Below are positions 6,139 to 64,000 of a DNA stretch of 64,000 nt, piece by piece; positions within the stretch are counted from its first letter, which is position 1, and each line of letters opens with the position of its first letter. The DNA is from Camelus dromedarius. Taxonomy: Eukaryota. The notes below the pieces were generated by a model. It did no database searches. It saw nothing but the letters and a program-made list of their open reading frames with translations, and was not told the origin of the DNA. The stretch lies in assembly GCF_036321535.1 (NCBI RefSeq), contig NC_087438.1, positions 98,704,001-98,768,000 of the forward strand, written 5' to 3'. Made by a program: the position numbers and the translations under genes.

Positions 6139-8565
<2,427 letters not shown>

Positions 8566-11049
8566 AGATTTTATTATCATGCAGAACTTTTAGAATGAGT
8601 GCTGTTTCTTTGTAAAAATGTATTCATTGTAATGCAAAATTACATTTTGGGTAACTTCATTTTACTTAAGAGTTTTGAGAAATTTCAATAATTTAAATCT
8701 ATTCTCTGCTCATTAACCGTGAAAAAACGAAGGGAGCTAGGATTTGCTTAGTCTTTCTTTCAAAATGCAACCTCAAATAATTTATTCAGATATACAGCAG
8801 TTTCTATTCAACTTAATTGCACACTTGGCTCAGTCATTCTCTGGGTGTTATGGACTCCAGAACCTCTCATCAAGACAATTTTTCCATGTTTGATATAGTA
8901 TTATTATAGAGGAAAATGGATGGTAGGAATAAAAAACATGCATTTTTTTATGTTTTCAGGTTTTTTAAAAAAATATAATCTTTACATTTCATTTTTCTGC
9001 CAAATATGTCAGAGAATTTTTCTGCTTTCAGGTATTTTTCTTCATAAGTATGTTGCTACTAGATGCTGTTACAGTAAGATAAGTTCTAATCTTGTTTGGA
9101 TTAAGATATATACTCAGCCCATACTTGTCTAGAAACTTCTTGGTACTACCCAAGAGAGGTAATCAATACTGAGATGCTTATTCTACTTTTCTTTACCTCT
9201 CCTGGCCATTTTTGATTGGTCCAGTGACAGACTCCTGATTAAAGTGGGAATGGGCACATTCTCCAAGCCCCTAAATTTGTAATTAAGGTATAGTTCATCT
9301 ATTTTTTTTTCTTGATTGCTTGTAACTAGGAAGTAAATGTTAAGCATAGGCTGAGGTAGCCATGTTTATACTTATGTAAGCTGGCATCACAGAATGGCAT
9401 CTAGAGAGGGAAGCAAAAAGGGAGTAAGGAAGGGAATGAAGGAGTAACAGTGAGAAGGAACAAGGGAGTGGAGGAATCCGAAGCCTAAAAAACAGTAGAC
9501 TTAAGACAGCTGCTTGGTGCTAGATCTGTCAGTTCTTGATTTCAGTTTTTCTAAGTCCCCCATGTCAAATTGTCCTTGAGTTATACAGTAACACTCTAGT
9601 TTCTTAATAATAGAACTCCTCTGTTTAACCTATCTTGGGGAGGGGTGCATTTCTGGAAACAAAAAGTGACAGAAAAGATACATACAACCTTGAGTACTCA
9701 ATTAGACTGTATAGTATCAAACCCAGGTCTTTTATTGCATGCATCTAATATTAACTTAATCAATTAATGGAATAAAAATGTGCAAGCTTAAAGATAACTA
9801 ATCTATACTAGAGAATTTTTCTACAAAATTTTGTAAATAATTTATGAGGTCTTTCGACGGAAAATTGTTACAAAAGGTTTTATAGAATATCTTGTTACCA
9901 AGTTTCTCTTCAATATTTTATGTGCCCCAGGATCAGTTTTTAAAAGTAACACTGAAATTGTTATTATTTGGATGTCCATACATTTTCTCAGGATCATCAT
10001 ACCCTCCTTAGCACCTCTTTCTTTTAAAAATTATTTAATGAGTTCAATATGGAATAAATATTTTATCATTTAATGTAAATTAAATAATCTGATTTATAGA
10101 TCATATAGGTTGATTCATTATTTCATTAATGGTAATAACTATAATTTGATTGACACATAGTCTACTAGAAAGCCTCATGAAAAACATTTCAAGCTCTCTG
10201 CCAAGTTGATGGGCTTAAAATTTTCTCCTTAAAAGAGAAAACAAGGAGAAAATTTATCTGAAAGATGGGAATAAAAAACTAATTTTGATCCATTTGCTTA
10301 CTGACATAGGAAACAGCTTCTATCATTAGTACTTAAGGCCACATTTTCTTGAACATCTAATTCTATAATAAAGAATTTAAATCCATGACCAAGATCTTTC
10401 CTTGAGGAAAATTATCAGATTTTCAATTTGACCAGCATGTTCTCACATTTTGAAAGCTTACTAAATCAAATTTATTGCATGGTGTAGAGCAAAACATTTT
10501 AAAATATAGTATCAATTTGAGTTATCTGTACCTTAATTAAATCAATACGCAACACAACTTTTACACTTGGCTCACATTGTTTTCCCAGTTAGCCAGGTAA
10601 TTGGAGTGCCAGAATGTATGACACTGTCCATTATTTAAACATTATTATTAAAATACTGTCCAAATTTTGGTGCAACTGGGGAGACCACAGGTCCTCCACT
10701 CCAAGATGTTTTTCCCATCCTTAGGAGAAAAAGAACTTCAGTTCCATGCTAAGGTGAATCTCAGGTTCAACATGTATGAATCTTAGTTTTAGGAATAACT
10801 GTAGAAGCTCTTTACAAATTGTTTGGATAATGGAACAAGTCAATGCAATATGCTCACAGATGTACAGAGATATTCCCCTTAGACAATATTTACAAACAGG
10901 TTATCCACAACCCCTTAAGCTGCCTGTTGAGTTTGTATAATAGACCAATTCTAGCTGGTCTATCACTTATGTTGATATGGTGAAACATAATGAATGAATC
11001 TCTTCATCTACTGTGCTAGCTATGAGTTGAGTTTATTGGTATTTATTCT

Positions 11050-11579: not shown

Positions 11580-14048
<2,469 letters not shown>

Positions 14049-16422: not shown

Positions 16423-18957
<2,535 letters not shown>

Positions 18958-48936: not shown

Positions 48937-49842
48937 TCAGTATGCTTCACAGTGGCTCATCATCATCTTCCTGCTGTATTCATAAGCCAAAAACAGTGAC
49001 CCATTGGCAGGGAACGCTCGAACCAAAGTAGCTTTCAGTCCAGAATATAAGGCTGCTACTCCTTCATTTTTCACAACACTTACAAGAGTTCTGATAAATC
49101 CTGCCTGTTTTCCAAACATGGAAAGAACCTGAATTCTGGATTTGATACAATCCACGGGGTATATGACAAGCCAAAGACAAATTCCAGCAATACCACCACT
49201 TAACATCAAGGGAACAGGGCCAAGTTCATCTTTGGATCCTCCTGAAGCAAAAAATGATCGGCTCAGTTCATACCCACCGAAGAAGAAGAAGTAGCCCGGT
49301 ACTTCTTGAAGTAGAGTGCTCGAAAGTCCACGGTAGAAGCCCAAGGGTCCATCCTTTCTAAGGATACTCTTCACGACGGACCAGACTGTATTATGGCTTT
49401 TTGCTATCCTCCCTGACATCTCCATCTCGTGCATGGTCTGCAGCCGGCACTTCACAAGCTCAGTGGGGCACAGGGCCAGCGCGGCAAACGCGGAGGCGAA
49501 GGAACCCGCGGCCGCAGTCTGCAGATCACTCAGCTTTGCCTGCTTGTCCAATCCAACCACTTTACTCACAAACTGCTGGCAGAAGCCGTAGCACATAAAG
49601 AGGACGGAGTTCTCTGCGACGTAGGCCATCAGCGCTGGGCCCGTCCCCTTGTAGAAGCCCCGCAAGCCCACTTGGGAGTACGTCTTCAAGCAGCAGTCGA
49701 TGAGGCCCTTGTACAGGCCAGGGAACGTCTGCATCTTCACTTTCATGGTGTCGAAGGGCTGCCCGGTCAGGACGCAGGCTGTGCCCCCGAGGGCCCCCGC
49801 GGTGAGGTCGATGGCGGCTTGGATGGCAGGATTGGACTCCAT
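48937..49842 (-). CDS. SLC25A2: Mitochondrial ornithine transporter 2 (ORNT2/ORC2), 301 aa, intronless
   Basis: Three carrier signature motifs (PFDTMK, PTELVK, PVDCIK). Residues E77, Q179, E180, W224 and R275 are present, and Q179 distinguishes ORC2 from ORC1 (R179). The intronless CDS and position between the beta and gamma clusters are established for SLC25A2. Confidence 0.97.
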
Positions 49843-50700
49843 GTTCGCCCACTGATCTGCTGGTCCCCGGGAAAGGCCACTCTCTGCAGCCTAACACGGG
49901 CGTCTTATGTCCCGACGCCCACTCTGGACTCTCTCCCCCGCGGGAGAAGCCGCTTAACCCCAGACTAGGCCGCCCTCCGCGCGCCCTGAAATAACCCCCT
50001 GCGGACCGCCTTGCGCGCGCCTTTCCACGCGCCCCGCGGCCCCCGCCCCGCCCCGCCCGCCGCCTGCCGGGCGCCGCCCGCCATCCCCGCGCCCCCGGCC
50101 GGGGCGCAGACTAGGTAAACATTTTTAATGGACTACAATCCAGCGATTGAAAGCTGTTCGATAAATTCTTGCGATTTCGGCGGGAACCGCTAGGCGCCGC
50201 TACTCACCGGCTTTCCTATTCGGCCTGCCCCTCCACCGCCCGCATTTCCTACTCGGTAAATCAAACTGGGCGGGGGCTGGGGGGAGGGGTGCTCCCGTTT
50301 GACCGTGACTGGGGTCAAAGGGTCAACCTCAGAAACAGGTTTTAAATAGGGAAAACAAACAAACTACTGGGGGGAGAGGGGAGCGGTTTACATGAGAATA
50401 CGTGGCTCCTTTGAATCAGAAAACCCTTAATCCTTTCCCGAGAGGAATGGCGGCTCAGCAAAGGTGCCGGCCCGCCGCGCCCCTCTGGGTCTCGCCCTTT
50501 GCTCGCCTAGCGACGCTGGCTGAGGCCCGAGGCCGGCAGATCCGCTACTCGGTGCCTACGGAGCTAGAGAAAGGCTGTTTCGTGGCAACGCGCCTAGGAT
50601 CTGAGCCTAGATCCTGCGAGCTGGTGGGACGCAGAGTCCCCATCATTTCCAGAGGTAGGACAAGGCCTTGTACCATCGGGTTGGAAAACGTATCTATATA
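49400..50700. promoter_or_regulatory. CpG island / SLC25A2 promoter with tandem GC boxes
   Basis: Dense CpG; (ccccg)3 Sp1-type boxes at 50041-50056 upstream of the SLC25A2 ATG. Confidence 0.8.
50186..50208 (+). promoter_or_regulatory. Gamma-type CSE-like / CTCF-like element
   Basis: accgctaggcgccgctactcacc contains the CGCT box and lies about 260 nt upstream of the relic ATG at 50447, similar to CSE spacing in the intact genes. Confidence 0.6.
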
Positions 50701-54999: not shown

Positions 55000-56049
55000 T
55001 CACTTCTCTAGGAGTGATTCTAGCTCTTCTTGCAGAGAGCTGAGCTGCTCCTTTTCTCGGTCTTCCTTTTGTTTCAGTTCATCTAGCACAGCCTGAAATC
55101 TGTTCTTGAGAGCCAGGTTTTCCACTTTCATGATGAGATCCTCCTGTCGCTTTGCCCTGTCCTGGGTCTCCTGGAGCTTGCCTTTCATGTTATCAATCTG
55201 TTTCTGGATTCCCATAACCAGCTGATTGGTTCCCTCGTTTTCTTGGTGCTGTTCATCTGATTCATTTAGCTTGTCCTGTAGCTGTCTTTCCAGATCTTCC
55301 TCAGTGTCGATGATGTTTATATCTTCTTCATCTTGATGCTGCGTCTCATCTTCATCTTCGCTGCTGCTGCTGAGGTCATTGAATATCTCCCGAAGCTCAT
55401 CATGTTCTAATGAGTCATGGCCCTGCCTGTGGCCAGACATTCCTGGAGAAGCGATATCAAGGCCCTGATTTTCTGTTTCTTTTGTTTCATCTTCAGCAAT
55501 TATTTCCCAACGAGTACTGACAGCTTCAGCATCTGTGCTCAGCAACCGCTTCACTTCTTTTTCCACATCTGGAGATTCAATATACTTCTTCTTTGCTGTC
55601 TTCCGGAACCTTCTCTTTCGGACATTTTTTAGAGGCAGAGTAATTCCATGGTTCCATACAAATTTTTTCTCTTTGTCCTTATCCTTTTTCTTGCTTGCTT
55701 TGGGATCAGCAGTAGCAACTGGTTCCTCCACAGGAGGATAGAGATCACCATCAACTGTAGAGACAAGCATCTGACAGATATCAGCTGTCTTGTAAAAGGT
55801 TTTCTTATCAATGGTTTTCAAACTTTCCATAACACACGGCAGATCCACCAGTTTTGAGGCCAGTGGGACCCGATCCACTCTGACGATTCCATGACGCCCA
55901 TCAGGGTGTAATTCAATTGTCAGTCTGTCCTTCAGGTTGACATGGCCAGACTGTACTGCTCGCCTCACAGTAGAGGCATACTCTGGAGGAAGGCGTAAGA
56001 TAAACTGGCTCTCCAGTTCATGAGGAGCATCATCTTTGCTCTTACTCAT
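55000..56049 (-). CDS. TAF7: TFIID subunit 7 (TAFII55), 349 aa, intronless CDS
   Basis: MSKSKDDAPHELESQFILRLPPEYASTVRRAV...NHGITLPLKNVRKRRFRK...LQEELESLLEK, with length equal to human TAF7. The track's 56094 start is a GTG, so the true ATG is 56049. Confidence 0.98.
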   Translation of the reverse strand: MSKSKDDAPHELESQFILRLPPEYASTVRRAVQSGHVNLKDRLTIELHPDGRHGIVRVDRVPLASKLVDLPCVMESLKTIDKKTFYKTADICQMLVSTVDGDLYPPVEEPVATADPKASKKKDKDKEKKFVWNHGITLPLKNVRKRRFRKTAKKKYIESPDVEKEVKRLLSTDAEAVSTRWEIIAEDETKETENQGLDIASPGMSGHRQGHDSLEHDELREIFNDLSSSSEDEDETQHQDEEDINIIDTEEDLERQLQDKLNESDEQHQENEGTNQLVMGIQKQIDNMKGKLQETQDRAKRQEDLIMKVENLALKNRFQAVLDELKQKEDREKEQLSSLQEELESLLEK

Positions 56050-56307
56050 CTTTATTTCTTGGTGACTCACTTCTCTAATAACCACTTGTTGCACTAAAAA
56101 GTTCCACCTATTTCAACAGAAAGACCAGTTCGCTATGAATTGAAATTTTAATTACAAACAGTTCTAAGTACAACAGCAGCTAAGCGTCTATTTTAAATTA
56201 AGCCCCAAGTCTTTCTAAGTATGCTGTGGCTGAATAGCAGTCGTTACTGACACGTTGCCTTACTCAATTAAGTCCATTTAAATCTTAGCTGCAATGCCAA
56301 GTTCCAA

Positions 56308-56323
56308 CCTCTAGATGCCGCTG
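56308..56323 (+). promoter_or_regulatory. Gamma-type CSE-like / CTCF-like element inside the TAF7 leader region
   Basis: cctctagatgccgctg has one mismatch to the CTCF core, and the same GCCGCT variant occurs in the elements at 50186 and 62725. Confidence 0.5.
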
Positions 56324-56551
56324 CAGGACAACGCAGAGAGCTAGCCAGCAGGAAAGCAAATGGCGGCTGCTACGGAATGATTTTCGGCACACAAAGCTAA
56401 GGCCCAGCAGACACTCCCAATCCACAACTCTCCCGGAACAAAGATATTCAAAAAGCGGGGCGTAGTGAGCTCTCTTCGCCTCGGGTACTTACAATCCAGT
56501 GACGATTATAAATCCAGTTTCTCCGGACAGGAGCGAGCAGAAGCCACTCCG

Positions 56552-56637
56552 GAGCAAGGCGGCCCGTGGCCGAGCGTCTCCTTCTTGATTCCTTTGTTCT
56601 TTCCGGCTCGCGGCAATCAGGAGCGATTCGCTACTAA
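56552..56637 (+). pseudogene. Possible PCDHGB-like signal-peptide relic
   Basis: GPWPSVSFLIPLFFPARGNQ, then IRY* after a frameshift (compare PCDHGB GPRQVLFPLLLPLFYPTLCEPIRY). The match is short, so the call is tentative. Confidence 0.4.
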
Positions 56638-58799
56638 TTATTAGTGAAACAGCTCAGGACAGGCAACACGAAATCTCGCTGATATCCGCAGCTTCGAGAG
56701 CCAGATTCTGCAGCTCCTCAGCTGCGCAGCTCGGCAGCTCAGCAGACCTCCGTCCGGAGCTGCAGACCCAGCGGAGAATAAAACGCTACGCAACCGGAGG
56801 CGGCTATGAGTGACAGCACAACTCGGGCGGAAGTGCGCACTGCCCCGGCGCGCGCAGGCGCAACGCACAATTACGCTATCCAGCGTGACTTGTCTCGCGA
56901 GAAGTTGGCTTTACGCGATGAAGATGATACTCTCGTGAAGAACGTTGGTTTGGAAATATTTAGAGAAAACAATACCAAGAAAGACATAGATTCTCCGGCC
57001 CGCCCCCGCTAAGCCAGAACTTTTAGCGGATCGCCATGAAGCCGGATAGCTCCTTGGCTTCCGGGTGATTGCCGGAGATAGGGAGTCCGTGAGGAAAGCG
57101 TCCTTTTCCTGGAAACATCTGGATGCTCCCCGGGCTGTATCCAATTTGGAGCCGAACTAAGAATTTATAACTAACCATGCTGTGGATTTTAAAACACCCA
57201 AATCAGTGGAGTGAGGACTTGCTGTCCACTATGTAGTTCTAAGTCTGTGTGTGCTGGTTATGGAAATGTTCGTAGGAGGCCTATGACTAGGGGTCTGTTT
57301 CTGTTTTGAAGGCCCTCAGAAGGAACAAGGATGATTCCTCTTTTTAATGTATTCGACGTAGATGTAAATGGTAACAGAGAAGTAAGTGTTCTTCTGGAGG
57401 CCCATGTTCGTTTAGGACAGTTATCTGAAAGACGAATGGTCTGATTAGAGTATAATTCAAATATTACTCCCTGTCAGTCATTTGCCAGTAATTTTTAAAT
57501 TAGTTTGGAATTTTTAAAATTCCACCTCTACTGTTTTGAGAACTGTTTTCTGCTTGCCTCTTGTATGGGTGGTCAGTTATTCATCAACATGTATTTATAG
57601 CATTTTAGCCTAACTATGTAACAGTTTCCACTTCTTCCTATTCATTTCCATTTATTTTTTAATAGGATCAGTTTGGTAGAGCATCAAGGTCATTTAAAAT
57701 TTAATTTCTGTCCTCTAAAATATTAACACCTGCATCTAAGTTTAAGAGAACTCACTAAAAATGTGATTAACATCTACAAAATTAACTGTATTTCTTTATG
57801 TACTTGTCTCCCTTGCTCTAGGTTGGAAGCTCCATGATAATCAGGAATGTAATATTTTGTTCATCTGGTCCTGGTGCCTAGTATCAAAACATGGGAGATA
57901 AAAAAAATAGTTGCTAATTGAATGAAAGAATTGATCCATCCAGAAAAAATATATATAAATATAGCCCAAATTCTTTAATAATTTGTGAGAGAAAATATAT
58001 TCCAAGTCACATTAAAATGAGATACAGCAACTTTATATACATTTCCTCTCCAGTCAGGGACAGTGCCAATTATCATGAGGGGAGAAGTTTGCAAAAAGTG
58101 TGTGTGTGAATGTGTTGCCTTTGCTTTTAGTAGACTGTGAGACTATGTATGATGGGGGGGATTTAAATGGCTTGGCACCAGTCTGATTTTTTTTTTATGT
58201 TAAGTCTGAGGAAAAATTAAGCTCTTCCACATAATTGTACTTTAGTTCTTTGTTCTGTAATGTGTTGAAGAATGTTAGCTGATGTATTTCCAGGATTCTC
58301 TCTTTCCTCTTTTTGAAGATGAAATTTTCCCCCTGTACTTATCCCTTCATTGTACCAGATTTTACGCATTTCATAGATATGAGTTTAACATGCTAGCCTC
58401 TGCATAATCCTTTTTTGTGATTATAAAATTTGAGGCCCAGCTTATACAAGAAGGTTATCCATATATTGCTTTGCATTTTAATTGCCTATGAGTTTTATGA
58501 TGTTCAAATATCTTTGTCACAGAAAATAACCTGAGATAAATTCTATGCAATTCTGATTTGCCAAAATTATGATATATTTTAGTTAGTAAGCCTTTAAGTA
58601 GAAGATTGTCAGGAATAATTAAAAGGATCAACTGTAGTTTCCCCTGAAGTATCTACCTCCTTCAATCCTGAAACATATTTTCTCCTTTTGAGTTTGACAC
58701 GTTTTCTGAAGGCTATTTTTTTGCAGGGTAATTACATTGATCCTAAAGCTAAGAGCTCTGCCAGGTCACCATTACCTTAATGTCTGTTGATACATGCAC

Positions 58800-58800
<1 letters not shown>

Positions 58801-58840
<40 letters not shown>
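58801..58840 (+). repeat. (TG)20 microsatellite
   Basis: Seen directly. Confidence 0.97.
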
Positions 58841-58843
<3 letters not shown>

Positions 58844-59339
58844 ATGTTTATCAAATCCATTTGACATACAGAAACACTTTGAGTTGATGAAAGAATTACA
58901 CTCCTGTGATTGTTCCATGGAATATCTGTGATACTAGTGAACCAAAGATTTGGGGGTAGCAGTAAATTCTCCAGAGTAGTAACAAGGCTCAGAAGGCTTC
59001 CTACCTATGATAAAGGAGTAGCACTATCAAGCTAATGCTATATGATTGAAAATTCCCTTTAATAAACTTCCAAGTTCCTTATACTGTGGGTGTTAAAAAA
59101 TTATGGGTTATGGGAGAAGCCTTGCTTGTATCTTGGAGATAGAAAATTAAATTATAGGAGTGAGGAAATAGCAAATACCCTTATATATTGCTCTAGTAGT
59201 ATATAAACAGTGAAAAGCACGTTAGCCAAAATGTTGCAGTCTCTTGTATTAAGTGTGATGCTTTCTATAGAAAAAAGACCAACCTGATTTACACTGGTTT
59301 AAACAATAAGAAAATGTTTTTGAAAACCAGGTAGTCTTG

Positions 59340-59700
59340 AGCAACTCTGTTCAACAGAGATATAATATGACCCATAGATGAAAGCCACATTATTAAATTA
59401 TTTAATATTAAATTATCTAGTAGCTGCATTAAAATGGCAAAAGGAAACACATGAAATTAATTTCGGTAGCATTTTATTTAGCCTAATTATCAAAAATATT
59501 TCAACATAGAATCAATGTAGAAATTGTTAATGGTATGTTTTACATTCTAATTTTGTACTAAATCTTCAAAATCTGGTGTGTATTTTACACTGAAACACAT
59601 TTCATTTTGGACTAGTCACATTTCACGTTCTCAGTGGCCATGTGTGGCTGGCTGATGGTTACTGTATTGAACAGTGCAGTTCTAGAAACATGGCTGCCTC
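59340..59700. mobile_element. hAT-Charlie fossil, MER33/MER3-like
   Basis: Ends ggactagtcacatttcacgttctcagtggccatgtgtggctgg...tattgaacagtgcag, the typical MER3/MER33 terminus. Confidence 0.7.
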
Positions 59701-59999
59701 TAGGCATGATAGAATCATGGCCTGGCACAAATTGTTTTAACTTCCTGATTTTAGAGAATGAACATTTATTTATACTTGTTATTCTTTCAGCTTTTCCCTC
59801 ATCTTGTAAACTTCGAGAGTCTATGGTCATAAGAAATCTGACAGAAGTAACTGGGGAACTTCCTTTCTTGGCCGTGGTAAGTTCAGAGAGTGTCTCTCCC
59901 TAACCAGAATCTGTCTTTCAACTTGATTGGTCTAACTAAGACTATACACCTATCCCTGGCTCAATAGTAGTCACCAGGGGAATACCCTAAGCCTATGAT

Positions 60000-60195
60000 T
60001 TTCAAAATGGTGGGGAGGAGAAGACATTTGATGATGCCTGGAGACATTTTGATTGTCGCAACTGTGGGGGTGGTATCTACTGGCATCTAGTGGGTAGAGG
60101 CCAGGGATGCTGCCAGATATCCTATAATGCACAGAGCATCCCCTCCACAACTAAGTTATCGGGCTCAAAATATTACCAGGGTTGAGAAACCTTGC
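60000..60195 (+). mobile_element. MER20-like hAT transposon fossil
   Basis: gtctggagacatttt-like core and tactggcatctagtgggtagaggccagggatgctg...gttgagaaacc. Confidence 0.75.
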
Positions 60196-60399
60196 CCTAA
60201 GCTCAGTTTTTAAATTATTAATTGTTTTAAGCCAGTATTCCTCACTAAACACTGACAAGAGGAGTGAGATCACCACTATTGGTTTAGTATCAGACCCTAC
60301 TACAGCTATGAATGGGTTCACCTTCCCCTTAGGTATGTGGAGAGTGGACCCACTACACTAAAAAGAAAGTGTTAGAAGAGATGAAAGGGCATGGGCAAC

Positions 60400-60737
60400 T
60401 GTCTTAGTCTTTTTGGGCTGCTGTAACAGTACCATAAACTGAGTGGCTTATAAACAACAGAAATTAATTTTTCAGCTCTGGAGGCTGAGAAGTCTGAGAT
60501 AAAGGCACTGACAGCTGTGGCGTCTGGTGAGCGCAGGCTTCCTGGTTCGTAGATGGTAGTCTTTTTTGCTGTAATCTCACGTGGTGGAAGGGATGAGGGA
60601 GCTCTCTGCAGCCCCTTTTACGTGATGACTCCACCTTGATGACCTAATCACTTCTCACGAGCCCTACCTTTAAATACCATCACATTGATTAAGTTTCAAC
60701 ATGTGAATTTTGGGGGACATAAATAGTCAGTCTGTAG
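60400..60737 (-). mobile_element. MLT1A-type MaLR solo LTR
   Basis: tgtcttagtctttttgggctgctgtaacagtaccataaactgagtggcttataaacaacagaaatt...tttcaacatgtgaattttgggggac. Confidence 0.8.
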
Positions 60738-60779
60738 AGGTAACCGATGGTATACAAGAAATAGCTGATTATTGGGGGG

Positions 60780-62330
60780 ATTTTAATAGTATGTATGTAA
60801 CTCCAAAAAAGATACAAATGGCCAGTAAGCCCATGAAAAGATGTTCAACATTATTAATCATTGGGGAAATGCAAATGAAAGCAACAATGAGTTGCCACCT
60901 TACACCCATTAGGATGACTACTCTCCAAAAAAAGGAAAGTGACAAATATTGGTGTTATATGGAATAATGAAACCCTTGTGCACTGTTGGTGGGAGTGTAA
61001 AACGGTTCAGCCACTGTGAAAAACAGTCAGTGTTTCCTCAGAAAAATTAAAGAGAATTACCATGTGATCCAGCAATTCCACTTCTGGGTATATTTCCCAA
61101 AGAATTAAAAGCAGTGTCTCAAGGAGATTCTTGTATACCCATGTTTAGCAGCGTTGTTCACAGTAGCTAAAAGTTAGATGCACCCCAAGTGTGCATCAAC
61201 CAGTGAAGGCATAAGCAAAATGTGGCATGTGTACATATGATGAACTAATTCCTCAGCCTTAAAAAGGAAGGAAATTCCTTTTTTTCTTTTGAGATATGAT
61301 TGACCTACAACACTATGTTAGTTACAGGTATACACATAGTCTTTTTCTATACATTAGAAAATGATCACCACAGTATCTCTAGTTACCATCTGTCACCATT
61401 CAAAGTTACTACAATATTGTTGACTATATTCCCCATGCTATACACCCTTGTGACTCGTTTATTTTGTAATTGGAAATTTTTAATATCCCTCACCTTTTTC
61501 ACTCATCCTCTCACCCCTCTCCCTTCTGGCACCCACTTGTTTGGTCTCTGTATCTGTGAATCTGTTTTTGTTTCGTTATATTTGTTCATTTGTTTTGCTT
61601 TTGTAGATTCCATATGTAAGTGAAATCATACAGTGTTCGTCTTTTTCTGTTAGACTTATTTCACTTAGCATAATAATACCCTCTAGGTCCATTCATATTG
61701 TGGCAAATGGCAAGATTTCATTCTCTTTCATGGCTGTGTAAATGTACAATACATCTTATCCATTCATTTATTGATGGACACTTAGGTTGCTTCTGTATCT
61801 TGGCTATTGTAAATAATGTTGCAGTGGACATAGGGGTGCACATATCTTTTTGAATTAGTGTTTTCATTTTCTTCAGAAACATACCCAGAAGTGAAATTGC
61901 TGGATCTTGTGGTAGTTCTATTTTTAATTTTTTGAGGAACCTCCATACTATTTTAAAAAGGAAGAAAATTATGACATATGCTGCAATATAGATGAACCTT
62001 GAGGATATTATGTTATGTAAAATAAGCCAACTACAAAAAAGGCAAATACTGTATGACTCTGCTTACATGAGGTATTTAGAGTGGTCAGAATCATAGAGAC
62101 AGCTAGTAGACAGTGTTTGCCAAGGGCTGGAGAGAGGGGAGAATGAGGAGTAACCATTTTATGGGTATACATTTCAGTTTTACAAGATAAAAAGAGTTCT
62201 GGTGATGGATGATTGAGATAGTTGCACAATGTTATAAATGTGTTTAATACCACTTAACTGTACACTTAAAAATGGCTAAGTTGGTAAATTTTATGTTATG
62301 TGTATTTTATCACAATAAAAACAGAAAAAA
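60780..62330 (+). mobile_element. L1 3' region (+) interrupted by a nested L1 3' end (-, about 61277-61952)
   Basis: The outer L1 reads MASKPMKRCSTLLIIGEMQMK. The inner inverted L1 is flanked by ttaaaaaggaag(g/a)aaatt at 61259-61276 and 61953-61970. Confidence 0.8.
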
Positions 62331-62377
62331 AGTATATTTGTCTTTTAACAGTATGGATAGGTGGGTAGGAGTGGGTT

Positions 62378-62444
62378 GGAGGTGGCAATAGTTCAGTGGT
62401 AGAGCTCGTGTTTAGCATGCACGAGGTCCTGTGTTCAAAAAAAA
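62378..62444 (+). mobile_element. Truncated tRNA-derived (Vic-1-like) SINE
   Basis: atagttcagtggtagagctcgtgtttagcatgcacgaggtcctgtgttc followed by an A run. Confidence 0.7.
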
Positions 62445-62724
62445 TTTTTTTTAAGAAAAGGAAGCTTCAGTAGTATTCTTCAAAAGGAAATGTCAAGAGG
62501 GAAATTCTGTCAGAATGTTTAAGTGGATGTCAATTTTAATAAATTAAAATTTTGATTTAAATTTTGTAGAAAGAGCATTTTATTCATATTTTGTCAAAAA
62601 GAAATAGAGACTTGTAGCCTTTGTACTAAACCAACCAGTATTGTAAAGGAAGTCCAAGGAATAAAGCAAATCCAGTCTCCTGTGAGGACCTTCAGAAATA
62701 ACAGGCGGTAGATATTGCCCTGGA

Positions 62725-62746
62725 CCTCTGGGTGCCGCTGTCGGCC
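62725..62746 (+). promoter_or_regulatory. Gamma-B-type CSE / CTCF element
   Basis: cctctgggtgccgctgtcggcc with a CGCT box, in a CpG-enriched patch about 315 nt upstream of the relic signal peptide. Confidence 0.7.
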
Positions 62747-62989
62747 AGTCCGTGGCTAGAGTGAAACAAAGGAATCCACTGGCGTTTCTGACGCAGCGAT
62801 CCCTGATCCCCGCAGACTTTTGAGAAACCCATCAGGAAGGGACTCTGCACACCGTCTCTCCCGGAATCTTTTCCAAATATATAGGTCTGGCAACTCAGGG
62901 TGAGCCGCTGCCTTGTCTTTCCAGTGCACTTTGGTATCCCGGCAGCAACCGCAGCGAGATGTATTCAGACCTACGAAGCAGCATCAAGA

Positions 62990-64000
62990 AGACACAGAAA
63001 GAGGTCCTCCCACTGGGAAGGGCGCGAGAGTGCAGGAAGCACTGTTTTCCTTCCTGCTGTCAGTGTTCACTCGAGTGAACTGCGAAGTAGATGCGCTGCA
63101 AGATTCCCGATTCTGGAAGAGGTAACCAAGGACTTAAAAGTGGGCAATTTTGCTAAAGATCTACATCTCGGTGACCAGAACCATGGGTGAGTGCTGAGAA
63201 GCCTGTCTTTACCGCCAGCAAAGAGAGCAGGGAGGAACAAGACAATGACAGGATAGATCTAGCTGGTAGGCCAAAGGAAGTCCCTAGACTCCCTGAACCT
63301 GAAAACTTTACTGGAAATCCTATAAATGCCTTTCATATAAATGTATTTTTATCCTGGATATAAATAACATAAGGCTTTTAGTGCGGCCATTTTGTTTTGA
63401 AAATTCTGGGGAAACATCTTAATAGGAGCAAAGTTTACTCCTAAACTGCAGTAGATATGGATGGTGCAAATAATTCTCTACAAATTTATGAGATTAGTTT
63501 CAATTAACCATTTCCCCCACTGCCAGAAGTAGAAGAGAGCACAAGGGCAGTAAATATCCTGGTTATTAGAGAAATTGGGACTGGAGGAGCAGAGCTGCCA
63601 CCACTTAGTGGTGGGAAGGAAGCAGAACAGCTCAGAGAATGAAACGGATCTTGGATGCCAGAGCCAACCCTCCCATACTGAACCACAAAGAGTACAGCAG
63701 AGTCTGCCTTCTGGAGGACGTGCCTTCCACCTCCTTGTCTACATTCTTCAGGTGATCCCTTCTGACGTAGATGATACCCCTAAGGTAGAGTTCTCCTGTA
63801 CTTCCCACACAGTCCCACAGGATATACAGAATATATCCTATAATAGCAAGCACCATCTTTGATTTTGAAGAGTGACAGTTACATCGTAGCCTCTTCTACG
63901 GTGTAGAAGAGGACAGGAGACAGTTAAGGGCCCAATCCTGGTTGAAATGGAGGTTGGGAACCATAATGCAGTGCAGGTGACTTTCAACTGAGTGTCTAGT
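62990..64000 (+). pseudogene. Decayed PCDHGB-like variable exon (runs off the window end)
   Basis: LFSFLLSVF (63042), PILEEVTKDLKVGNFAKDL (to 63163), NPINAFHINV, DMDGANNSLQIYEIS, EQSCHHLV, LDARANPP (63651), ILQVIPSDVDD and FDFEE* (63858). These are colinear with EC1-EC3, with many stops and frameshifts. Confidence 0.8.

What the first reader, a model, noticed from the sequence alone, without database searches (positions are those of the whole stretch)
56300..57010. TAF7 may also be driven antisense from within a gamma-B relic
Seen on the + strand within the TAF7 leader/promoter: a CSE-like cctctagatgccgctg (56308), then about 270 nt later GPWPSVSFLIPLFFPARGNQ plus IRY (56552-56634), resembling a PCDHGB signal peptide. 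A weak EC1-end echo follows (SREKL...LVKNVGLEIFR...KDIDSP, 56893-57000), though its spacing is about 80 nt too long. TAF7 transcription would start inside the old exon and read back through its promoter, the same geometry as Pcdh-alpha antisense lncRNAs. Housekeeping motifs (ETS, NRF1, BANP) would have arisen on the relic. Inference: an essential TFIID retrogene was domesticated on a Pcdh antisense promoter. The evidence is weaker than for SLC25A2.
Basis: inference. Interest (0 to 1): 0.7.

Follow-up and report, generated by a model that had tools for sequence, protein, structure and literature searches.

The report
TAF7 leader overlies dead protocadherin exon
The non-coding first exon and the leader intron of the essential TFIID gene TAF7 are built, in reverse, from the control box and 5' end of a long-dead gamma-B protocadherin exon, which shows where this retrogene found the DNA for its promoter region.

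Summary
The window is the camel protocadherin (Pcdh) beta/gamma junction: three PCDHB exons (+), SLC25A2 (-) and TAF7 (-).

Protein-level tests are weak or null. Pfam finds nothing, a pan-Pcdh profile scores 1.1 bits, and a gamma-B profile scores 5.3 bits (p about 0.007).

DNA-level tests with orthologues are decisive:
- A profile of the TAF7 upstream region from six eutherians hits only the 5' ends of gamma-B exons (E 1e-5). It hits no gamma-A or beta exon, and none of 934 shuffled profiles reaches the score.
- The reverse search with a gamma-B profile finds the same spot upstream of TAF7 in whale (E 1e-7), tamarin (9e-7), bat and camel (2e-4).

Two colinear blocks survive. One is a gamma-type CSE/CGCT box (56289-56366), now inside TAF7's leader intron. 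The other is the 5'UTR, signal peptide and first EC1 codons (56487-56687), now antisense inside TAF7 exon 1.

The "EC1-end echo" is chance; its SREKL is encoded by the promoter palindrome TCTCGCGAGA.

So the relic and the read-back geometry are supported. A pre-existing Pcdh antisense promoter is not: gamma exons are reported to lack one. This is a new example of a retrogene recruiting a promoter and 5' exon. The scan noted a similar arrangement at SLC25A2.

The parts
55003..56049 (-). TAF7 coding sequence, one uninterrupted ORF of 349 aa (retrogene body)
   Evidence: Orthologues are 91-99% identical. The echidna relative is a 13-kb multi-exon gene.
56108..56492 (-). TAF7 5'UTR intron. The donor GTAAGTAC is at 56492-56485. 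The acceptor AG is at 56109-56108, or alternatively 56095-56094.
   Evidence: The splice sites are conserved in five or six species. The intron is removed in the gerbil transcript L003 compared with genomic L002, and the junctions map to camel 56492 and about 56110.
56493..56743 (-). TAF7 non-coding exon 1 (minimum extent; the true start may lie further right, near the ETS/NRF1 motifs)
   Evidence: Gerbil exon 1 (L002 9359-9532) maps to camel 56493 to about 56743.
56289..56366 (+). Relic of a gamma-B-type Pcdh promoter: the CSE with its CGCT box (core 56305-56334, CGCT at 56319-56322)
   Evidence: - Local alignment to porpoise gamma-B4 -268..-214: score 18, reached by 12 of 3000 shuffles and 0 of 194 other camel windows.
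- Colinear nhmmer hits.
- Pattern test: 2 matches found against 0.01 expected.
- Among the best-conserved 20-nt windows of the intron.
56487..56687 (+). Relic of the gamma-B exon 5' end: 5'UTR, lost start codon (about 56560, low confidence), a deletion of about 35 nt, signal-peptide core (56580-56604), IRY codons (56626-56634) and an NLAKD-like stretch (56670-56687)
   Evidence: - Orthologue profile against gamma-B4, B5 and B6 exons, -70..+160: E 2.7e-4 with five species, improving to 9.8e-6 and 2.3e-5 with six.
- Coordinates mapped.
- Reciprocal gamma-B profile hits camel 56274-56634 with E 1.9e-4.
- tblastn with gamma-B4 residues 3-35 gives 41.7% identity.
56828..56902 (.). TAF7 core-promoter motifs: ETS CGGAAGTG (56828-56835), NRF1-like GCGCGCAGGCGCA (56850-56862), TCTCGCGAGA palindrome (56893-56902)
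   Evidence: Conserved blocks in the alignments. CpG observed/expected is above 1 across 56500-57100. The transcription-factor assignments come from my own knowledge of the motifs and were not tested.
56893..57000 (+).
   Evidence: Scores 1.1 bits, which 18% of shuffles reach. No DNA hit lies beyond profile position 441, which is camel 56687.
62722..63737 (+). Second, much clearer gamma-B pseudo-exon ('relic2') with its own CSE (62722-62751). It is used here as a positive control and as context.
   Evidence: - gamma-B protein profile: 6.0, 14.3 and 19.2 bits, colinear.
- DNA z-score of 24.6 against gamma-B4.
- nhmmer E 1.2e-23, with orthologues in the bat and the tamarin.
- tblastn matches residues 34-261.

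Best explanation
Proposed history:
1. A gamma-B-type protocadherin variable exon once stood here, at the 5' edge of the gamma array, pointing rightwards like all Pcdh exons.
2. An mRNA of the ancestral multi-exon TAF7 gene was retroposed about 200-250 nt upstream of that exon's CSE promoter box, head-to-head with it.
3. The promoterless copy came to be transcribed from starts inside the CpG-rich 5' part of the exon, on the opposite strand.
4. A donor site (GTAAGT at 56492) splices this new non-coding exon 1 to an acceptor just upstream of the TAF7 start codon. The old Pcdh promoter box therefore lies in the removed intron.
5. The Pcdh exon died: its start codon was lost, it took a deletion of about 35 nt and frameshifts, and everything beyond about +160 nt is unrecognisable. 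About 400 nt of its promoter and 5' end survived for the age of Boreoeutheria at least, because they now serve as TAF7's leader.
6. Housekeeping motifs (ETS, NRF1-like, TCTCGCGAGA) sit just beyond the recognisable relic and drive TAF7.

Shown: the homology, the strand, the colinearity, the splice structure (in a rodent, and by conservation elsewhere), and the conservation.

Inferred: the order of events, that the promoter motifs arose after the exon's death, and the present function of the conserved CSE.
For: - **Orthologue profile.** A profile of five orthologous TAF7 upstream regions, searched against about 94 kb of Pcdh DNA, hits only porpoise gamma-B4 and gamma-B5 at -47..+160 (E 2.7e-4), plus their CSEs, colinear. 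With a sixth species and a lemur locus added, E improves to 9.8e-6 and 2.3e-5. All four gamma-B exons are hit, against none of four gamma-A exons, three beta exons or bat gamma-A1.
- **Controls.** The reversed profile gives no hit. Of 934 column-shuffled profiles the best reaches 4.9 bits, against 11.2 observed.
- **Reciprocal search.** A gamma-B DNA profile hits the same place upstream of TAF7 in Pseudorca (E 9.6e-8), Saguinus (8.6e-7), Myotis and camel (1.9e-4). In Myotis and camel a single alignment runs from the CSE to IRY.
- **Spacing.** The gap between the CSE block and the 5'UTR block is 167 nt in camel and 167 nt in gamma-B4. The bona fide relic2 and gamma-A1 show the same two-block pattern.
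- **CSE.**. The literature definition of the CSE is a CGCT box about 200 bp upstream of the ATG that binds CTCF (PMC4978886).
- **Gene structure.** Spliced gerbil transcript; conserved donor and acceptor.
- **Timing.** TAF7 and SLC25A2 are absent from the anole and non-tetrapod Pcdh clusters, so they were inserted in the mammalian lineage (PMC2764143). The echidna TAF7-like gene is multi-exon.
Against: - Protein-level evidence is weak. Pfam finds nothing, the pan-Pcdh profile scores 1.1 bits, and the gamma-B profile scores 5.3-6.4 bits.
- A mixed gamma-A/B DNA profile found nothing in camel alone.
- The 166 nt between the two blocks keep no similarity.
- The relic is not individually detectable in Meriones or Tupaia.
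- There is no camel transcript evidence. The transcription start is inferred from one chimeric rodent contig.
- No trace of EC2-EC6 or the transmembrane part lies downstream, so a whole exon at this site is inferred, not seen.
- Several methods were tried before the decisive one.
Confidence: 0.75

Rival explanations
1. Chance resemblance: a CpG-island leader with a pyrimidine tract happens to translate into F/L/P/S-rich peptides and to contain a CGCT-bearing motif.
For: Protein scores are near noise. With a matrix built from four intact gamma CSEs alone, the motif ranks only 13th in the window, among noise hits. The EC1 echo is chance.
Against: - nhmmer E-values of 1e-5 to 1e-7, specific for gamma-B, at orthologous positions in four species.
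- None of 934 shuffled profiles reaches the score.
- The score rises when species are added (one search compared).
- The blocks are colinear with equal spacing.
Confidence: 0.05
2. Convergence: the shared pieces are regulatory motifs (a CTCF-like site, ETS-like GGAA runs) that TAF7 and gamma-B promoters acquired independently.
For: The CSE-like site fits 13 of 15 positions of the general CTCF core as I recall it. The whole leader is fairly conserved, so it is under its own constraint.
Against: The best-aligned stretches are gamma-B coding strings with no known motif meaning: GATCCGCTAC (the QIRY codons), CTTTGTTCT.CC.GGCGCT (SLFCLAL) and AA.CTCGCC.AG (NLAK). The site also shares the gamma-specific GCCGCT, where the CTCF consensus has GGCGCT.
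Confidence: 0.05
3. One reading: the gamma-B exon already had an antisense promoter like those of Pcdh-alpha exons, and TAF7 simply took it over.
For: The geometry is the same: a start inside the exon, reading back through the sense promoter (bioRxiv 10.1101/360206).
Against: The same paper states that beta and gamma alternate exons have a single promoter CTCF site, lack the exonic site and the antisense promoter, and do not make antisense lncRNAs. No second CSE-like site lies in 56350-57300. The motifs at the TAF7 start are generic housekeeping ones.
Confidence: 0.1
4. Reverse order of events: TAF7 already had its promoter, and a fragment of a gamma-B 5' end was later copied into its leader by duplication or gene conversion.
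For: Only about 400 nt of the exon are detectable, and gene conversion is rife in this cluster: the three PCDHB exons share identical 3' halves.
Against: The fragment is shared by Cetartiodactyla, Chiroptera and Primates at the same position, so it is at least as old as Boreoeutheria. It includes the promoter box at native spacing and in cluster orientation, as expected for an in-place exon.
Confidence: 0.05

Closest known systems
Retrogenes that recruit a promoter and a new 5' non-coding exon from host DNA, often a nearby CpG island (described in retrocopy surveys; cited from my own knowledge, not read here)
   Same: An intronless coding body, with a new 5'UTR exon and intron made of DNA at the insertion site and a CpG-island promoter.
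   Different: Here the donor DNA can be named. It is the antisense strand of the promoter-proximal part of a dead clustered-protocadherin variable exon, and the old promoter box ends up inside the new intron.
Pcdh-alpha antisense lncRNAs from exonic (eCBS) promoters (bioRxiv 10.1101/360206)
   Same: Transcription starts inside a variable exon and runs antisense through the CSE promoter.
   Different: Those promoters sit at a second, exonic CTCF site and are reported only for alpha exons. The TAF7 start carries housekeeping motifs, is constitutive, and yields a spliced mRNA for an unrelated protein.
SLC25A2 next to a dead gamma-A exon in the same window (earlier scan note s1-203832)
   Same: A retrogene lying head-to-head with the promoter of a dead gamma-type exon, about 6 kb away in the same intergenic stretch.
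   Different: There the EC1 stump is plain at protein level (19 bits; 70 bits by nhmmer). At TAF7 the relic is older-looking or more remodelled, is visible only with orthologue DNA profiles, and is actually transcribed as the gene's leader.
Pcdh variable-exon pseudogenes and relics (14 pseudogenes in anole, PMC2764143; relics in human and mouse as I recall from Wu et al. 2001, which was not available to read)
   Same: A decayed variable exon that keeps cluster orientation and its CSE.
   Different: The surviving part was co-opted as the leader of a housekeeping gene. I could not check whether this particular relic was ever listed.

Membership tests
Clustered protocadherin gamma-B variable exon (as a relic) | CSE with a CGCT box about 200-250 nt upstream of the start codon, on the sense strand | tested here: met
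   CGCT lies at 56319, about 240 nt before the inferred start (about 56560). In gamma-B4 and gamma-B5 it lies at -237 and -238.
Clustered protocadherin gamma-B variable exon (as a relic) | Subfamily-specific 5'UTR, signal-peptide and EC1-start sequence | tested here: met
   nhmmer E-values run from 9.8e-6 to 2.7e-4 in the forward direction and reach 9.6e-8 in the reverse direction. Only gamma-B exons are hit.
Clustered protocadherin gamma-B variable exon (as a relic) | Recognisable EC1 (Pfam Cadherin_2) domain | tested here: not met
   No Pfam hit at E<=10. The pan-Pcdh profile gives 1.1 bits. Only about the first 25 EC1 codons are traceable at DNA level.
Clustered protocadherin gamma-B variable exon (as a relic) | EC2-EC6, transmembrane and short cytoplasmic part in one exon of about 2.4 kb | tested here: not met
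   tblastn with full-length gamma-B4 finds nothing colinear in 56700-62700.
Clustered protocadherin gamma-B variable exon (as a relic) | Same orientation as the neighbouring variable exons, at a position inside the array | tested here: met
   It lies on the + strand, like the PCDHB exons, the SLC25A2-side relic, relic2 and gamma-A1 in the bat and tamarin loci.
Pcdh antisense (eCBS) lncRNA promoter | A second, exonic CTCF/CSE-type site next to the antisense start | tested here: not met
   No CSE-like score in 56350-57300. The literature says gamma exons lack it.
Processed retrogene (TAF7) | Intronless coding region, while the parental-type gene is multi-exon | tested here: met
   A single 349-aa ORF. 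The echidna gene spans 13 kb. TAF7 is absent from non-mammalian Pcdh clusters.
Processed retrogene (TAF7) | Poly(A) remnant and target-site duplications | not tested
   I did not look.
Functional CTCF-binding site | CTCF and cohesin occupancy | not testable with these tools
   Only motif similarity and conservation are available.

The most novel reading that the evidence does not exclude
The CSE kept in TAF7's leader intron may still be a working, forward-oriented CTCF/cohesin anchor. In that case the always-active, never-methylated TAF7 island would act as a fixed element of Pcdh beta/gamma loop architecture. More broadly, the CpG-rich 5' ends of dying gamma exons may have served as landing pads that domesticated two retrogenes side by side (SLC25A2 on a gamma-A relic, TAF7 on a gamma-B relic).
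Probability: 0.25. Interest if true: 0.75.

Novelty: new member of a known kind. Interest (0 to 1): 0.6.

Why it matters
TAF7 is an essential, ubiquitously expressed TFIID subunit that sits oddly in the middle of a stochastically expressed, methylation-controlled neuronal gene cluster. In human tissue its CpG island stays unmethylated while the Pcdh islands around it are silenced (PMC2776977).

Knowing that its leader and promoter region were carved out of a protocadherin exon has three consequences:
- It explains why TAF7 sits where it does.
- It gives a dated, sequence-level example of how a retrogene obtains a promoter.
- It moves the ancestral 5' edge of the gamma array to the left of both retrogenes.

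It also yields concrete tests. Is the intronic CSE still bound by CTCF? Do living gamma-B exons have latent antisense starts at the equivalent place?

Tried and rejected
- **Pfam** on every ORF piece of 56465-57157: no hit.
- **Pan-Pcdh N-terminal profile** (48 diverse sequences): no better than shuffles, both for camel and for the six-species consensus.
- **Mixed gamma-A/B DNA profile** on camel alone: no hit.
- **CSE matrix from four intact gamma exons only:** the candidate sits at the noise ceiling.
- **Similarity in the 166 nt between the two blocks:** none.
- **Remnants of EC2-EC6 downstream:** none.
- **EC1-end echo:** rejected as chance plus a promoter palindrome.
- **Marsupial synteny:** the intronless TAF7 copies of opossum and wallaby lie elsewhere, next to an RWD-domain gene and inside a spectrin-repeat gene, and no DNA was served.
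- **N-terminal extensions of database TAF7 proteins:** unspliced read-through or ab initio models, so uninformative.
- **Wu et al. 2001** (the source on Pcdh relics) is not held. A word search for PCDHGB9P found nothing.
- **N stretches** were left as they are.
Full report
**Setting.** The window holds three PCDHB variable exons on the + strand (6145-8565, 11619-14048, 16462-18957). It also holds SLC25A2 (48937-49842, -) and TAF7 (CDS 55003-56049, -). An earlier scan note names the genome as camel. The finding's interval, 56300-57010, is the CpG-rich region just upstream of the TAF7 start codon, with CpG observed/expected above 1 across 56500-57100.

**The observation.** The quoted strings exist. 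GPWPSVSFLIPLFFPARGNQ lies in ORF 56465-56644. IRY lies in another frame (ORF 56566-56637) and is followed directly by a stop. SREKL...KDIDSP lies in ORF 56806-57012.

**Protein-level tests.** These are poor.
- Pfam finds no family for any ORF piece at E<=10, while a real PCDHB N-terminus gives Cadherin_2 at 1.5e-33.
- A profile of 48 diverse Pcdh N-termini scores at best 1.1 bits, on the 'EC1-end echo'. That score is reached by 18% of 1000 dinucleotide shuffles.
- The dead gamma-A stump beside SLC25A2 scores 19.1 bits, or 29.9 chained, in the same test.
- A gamma-B-only profile (54 sequences, built) gives 5.3 bits on 56524-56616. Only 0.7% of shuffles reach that. It is also the only hit of 4 bits or more in the window that lies outside obvious relics.
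- This is suggestive and no more, because a pyrimidine tract translates readily into F/L/S/P strings.

**Orthologues and gene structure.** I fetched the TAF7 locus of a false killer whale, a gerbil, a tree shrew, a bat and later a tamarin.
- The alignment shows a conserved splice donor (GTAAGTAC, 56492-56485 on the minus strand) and acceptors just upstream of the ATG.
- A gerbil transcript contig (L003) lacks exactly this interval. Its exon 1 is L002 9359-9532, the intron is 9533-9943, and exon 2 follows. These map to camel exon 1 at 56493 to at least about 56743 and an intron at about 56108-56492.
- The part of that contig upstream of the junction encodes an unrelated phosphoesterase-like ORF. 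The contig is therefore chimeric, and its junction only gives a minimum for the 5' end.
- Conserved ETS (56828), NRF1-like (56850) and TCTCGCGAGA (56893) motifs lie to the right.
That explains the echo without any cadherin.
- The alignment also shows that the camel carries a private 5-nt insertion between the NQ and IRY codons. In the six-species consensus the signal-peptide-like string and IRY are in one frame: SIPLFFLALGKAIRYWLP.

**The CSE.** Promoters of living gamma exons (porpoise locus L007, bat gamma-A1) carry ...CTCT(R)(R)GCGCCGCTGTT... with the CGCT box at -232 to -238.
- The literature defines the CSE as a CGCT box with cluster-specific flanks about 200 bp before the ATG, and it binds CTCF/cohesin (PMC4978886).
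- The candidate at 56305-56334 shares CTCT.G..GCCGCTG..GG.CAA.G with gamma-B CSEs. It shares 20 of 30 bases with the CSE of a second relic in this window.
- It ranks 5th of 128,000 positions with a pooled matrix. With a matrix from four intact exons alone it is only at the noise ceiling.
- The best local DNA alignment of 56250-57050 to the gamma-B4 promoter and 5' exon is this block: 56288-56342 against -268..-214, score 18. That score is reached by 12 of 3000 shuffles and by none of 194 other camel windows. The bat orthologue gives the same alignment.
- The gamma-type core with one mismatch allowed occurs twice in the window, here and at relic2, against 0.01 expected.

**The decisive tests.**
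- *Forward search.* A DNA profile of the five orthologous regions (camel 56250-57050) was searched against about 94 kb of Pcdh sequence. It gave only four hits. Two were porpoise gamma-B4 and gamma-B5 at -47..+160 (E 2.7e-4). The other two were their CSEs (E 5 and 8), colinear and on the same strand.
- *Controls.* The reversed profile gave nothing. Of 934 column-shuffled profiles the best gave 4.9 bits, against 11.2 observed.
- *More data.* Adding the tamarin and a lemur gamma locus raised the scores: lemur gamma-B5 E 9.8e-6, porpoise 2.3e-5, gamma-B6 0.26 plus its CSE at 0.38. No gamma-A or beta exon was hit.
- *Reverse search.* A four-sequence gamma-B profile (-320..+299) was searched against the DNA upstream of TAF7 in six species. 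It found, besides real exons and relic2, the same spot in Pseudorca (412-617 nt from the ATG, E 9.6e-8), Saguinus (443-664, E 8.6e-7), Myotis (241-597, E 1.9e-4) and camel (225-585, which is 56274-56634, E 1.9e-4). In Myotis and camel one alignment runs from the CSE to IRY. Gerbil and tree shrew gave no hit.
- *What aligns.* The best-aligned stretches are gamma-B coding strings: the codons for SLFCLAL, QIRY and NLAK.
- *Spacing.* The gap between the CSE block and the 5'UTR block is 167 nt in both camel and gamma-B4. The intervening DNA keeps no similarity. The undoubted relic2 and gamma-A1 show the same two-block pattern.

**Extent.** In camel the relic comprises 56289-56366 (CSE block) and 56487-56687 (5'UTR, lost ATG, a deletion of about 35 nt, signal peptide, first 25 or so EC1 codons). 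Nothing is detectable beyond about +160 to +180, and no EC2-EC6 remnants follow.

**Interpretation.** TAF7 and SLC25A2 are absent from the anole and non-tetrapod clusters, so they entered in the mammalian lineage (PMC2764143). The echidna TAF7-type gene is multi-exon, so the intronless eutherian TAF7 is a retrocopy.
- The retrocopy lies head-to-head with the relic. Its new exon 1 is the antisense of the relic's 5' end, and its intron contains the relic's promoter box.
- The simplest reading is recruitment of a promoter and a 5' exon from the CpG-rich start of a gamma-B exon that then decayed, or had already decayed. The co-opted 400 nt were preserved by TAF7's own constraints.
- The geometry matches Pcdh-alpha antisense lncRNAs. 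However, the paper that described them says beta and gamma exons lack the exonic CTCF site and antisense promoter. A ready-made antisense promoter is therefore unlikely, and I favour new housekeeping motifs on relic DNA.
- The CSE core is among the best-conserved windows of the intron, though the whole leader is fairly conserved. Whether it still binds CTCF cannot be tested here.

**Limits.**
- I could not read Wu et al. 2001, so I cannot say whether this relic was listed there.
- Several methods were tried before the decisive one.

Noticed in passing
window 62722-63737 (+): There is a clear gamma-B-type pseudo-exon ('relic2') between TAF7 and the expected PCDHGA1. It has its own CSE (62722-751), signal peptide, EC1 and part of EC2, broken by frameshifts. 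Orthologous copies exist in the bat (about 4.8-5.3 kb from the TAF7 ATG) and the tamarin. The earlier notes I could see do not list it.
   Followed up: partly
window 50184-50213 (+): The gamma-A relic beside SLC25A2 still carries a CSE-like CTAGGCGCCGCT with a CGCT box. It scores 19.6-33.6 with my CSE matrices. The earlier follow-up note says the CTCF-type box was not kept, so this deserves a second look.
   Followed up: partly
window 56358-56367 (+): A YY1-like AAATGGCGGC lies about 30 nt right of the relic CSE, inside the TAF7 leader intron and on the strand opposite to TAF7. It is identical in four of six species, one base off in the bat, and lost in the gerbil. It is not present in gamma-B promoters.
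   Followed up: no
window 8103, 13601, 18492 (+), and 7767, 13265, 18156 (+): Each of the three PCDHB exons contains the same two CSE-like strings inside its coding 3' half (for example GCCGCCGCTGTCGGCCAG). From about ...[21 protein letters not shown] onward, the three exons encode near-identical protein over most of the remaining length, diverging again only in the last 30 or so residues. Each also has a masked N run at the matching place. This points to strong gene conversion, or to assembly collapse.
   Followed up: no
loci (no DNA served): Marsupial intronless TAF7 copies are not in the Pcdh cluster. In the opossum, one of the two identical copies (on two contigs) lies next to an RWD-domain gene. 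The wallaby copy lies inside a spectrin-repeat (SYNE1-like) gene. These are possibly independent retropositions.
   Followed up: no
L003 1-524: The gerbil Logan contig that carries the spliced TAF7 mRNA is chimeric. Its first 524 nt encode a metallophosphoesterase-like ORF unrelated to the locus.
   Followed up: partly
   Followed up: no
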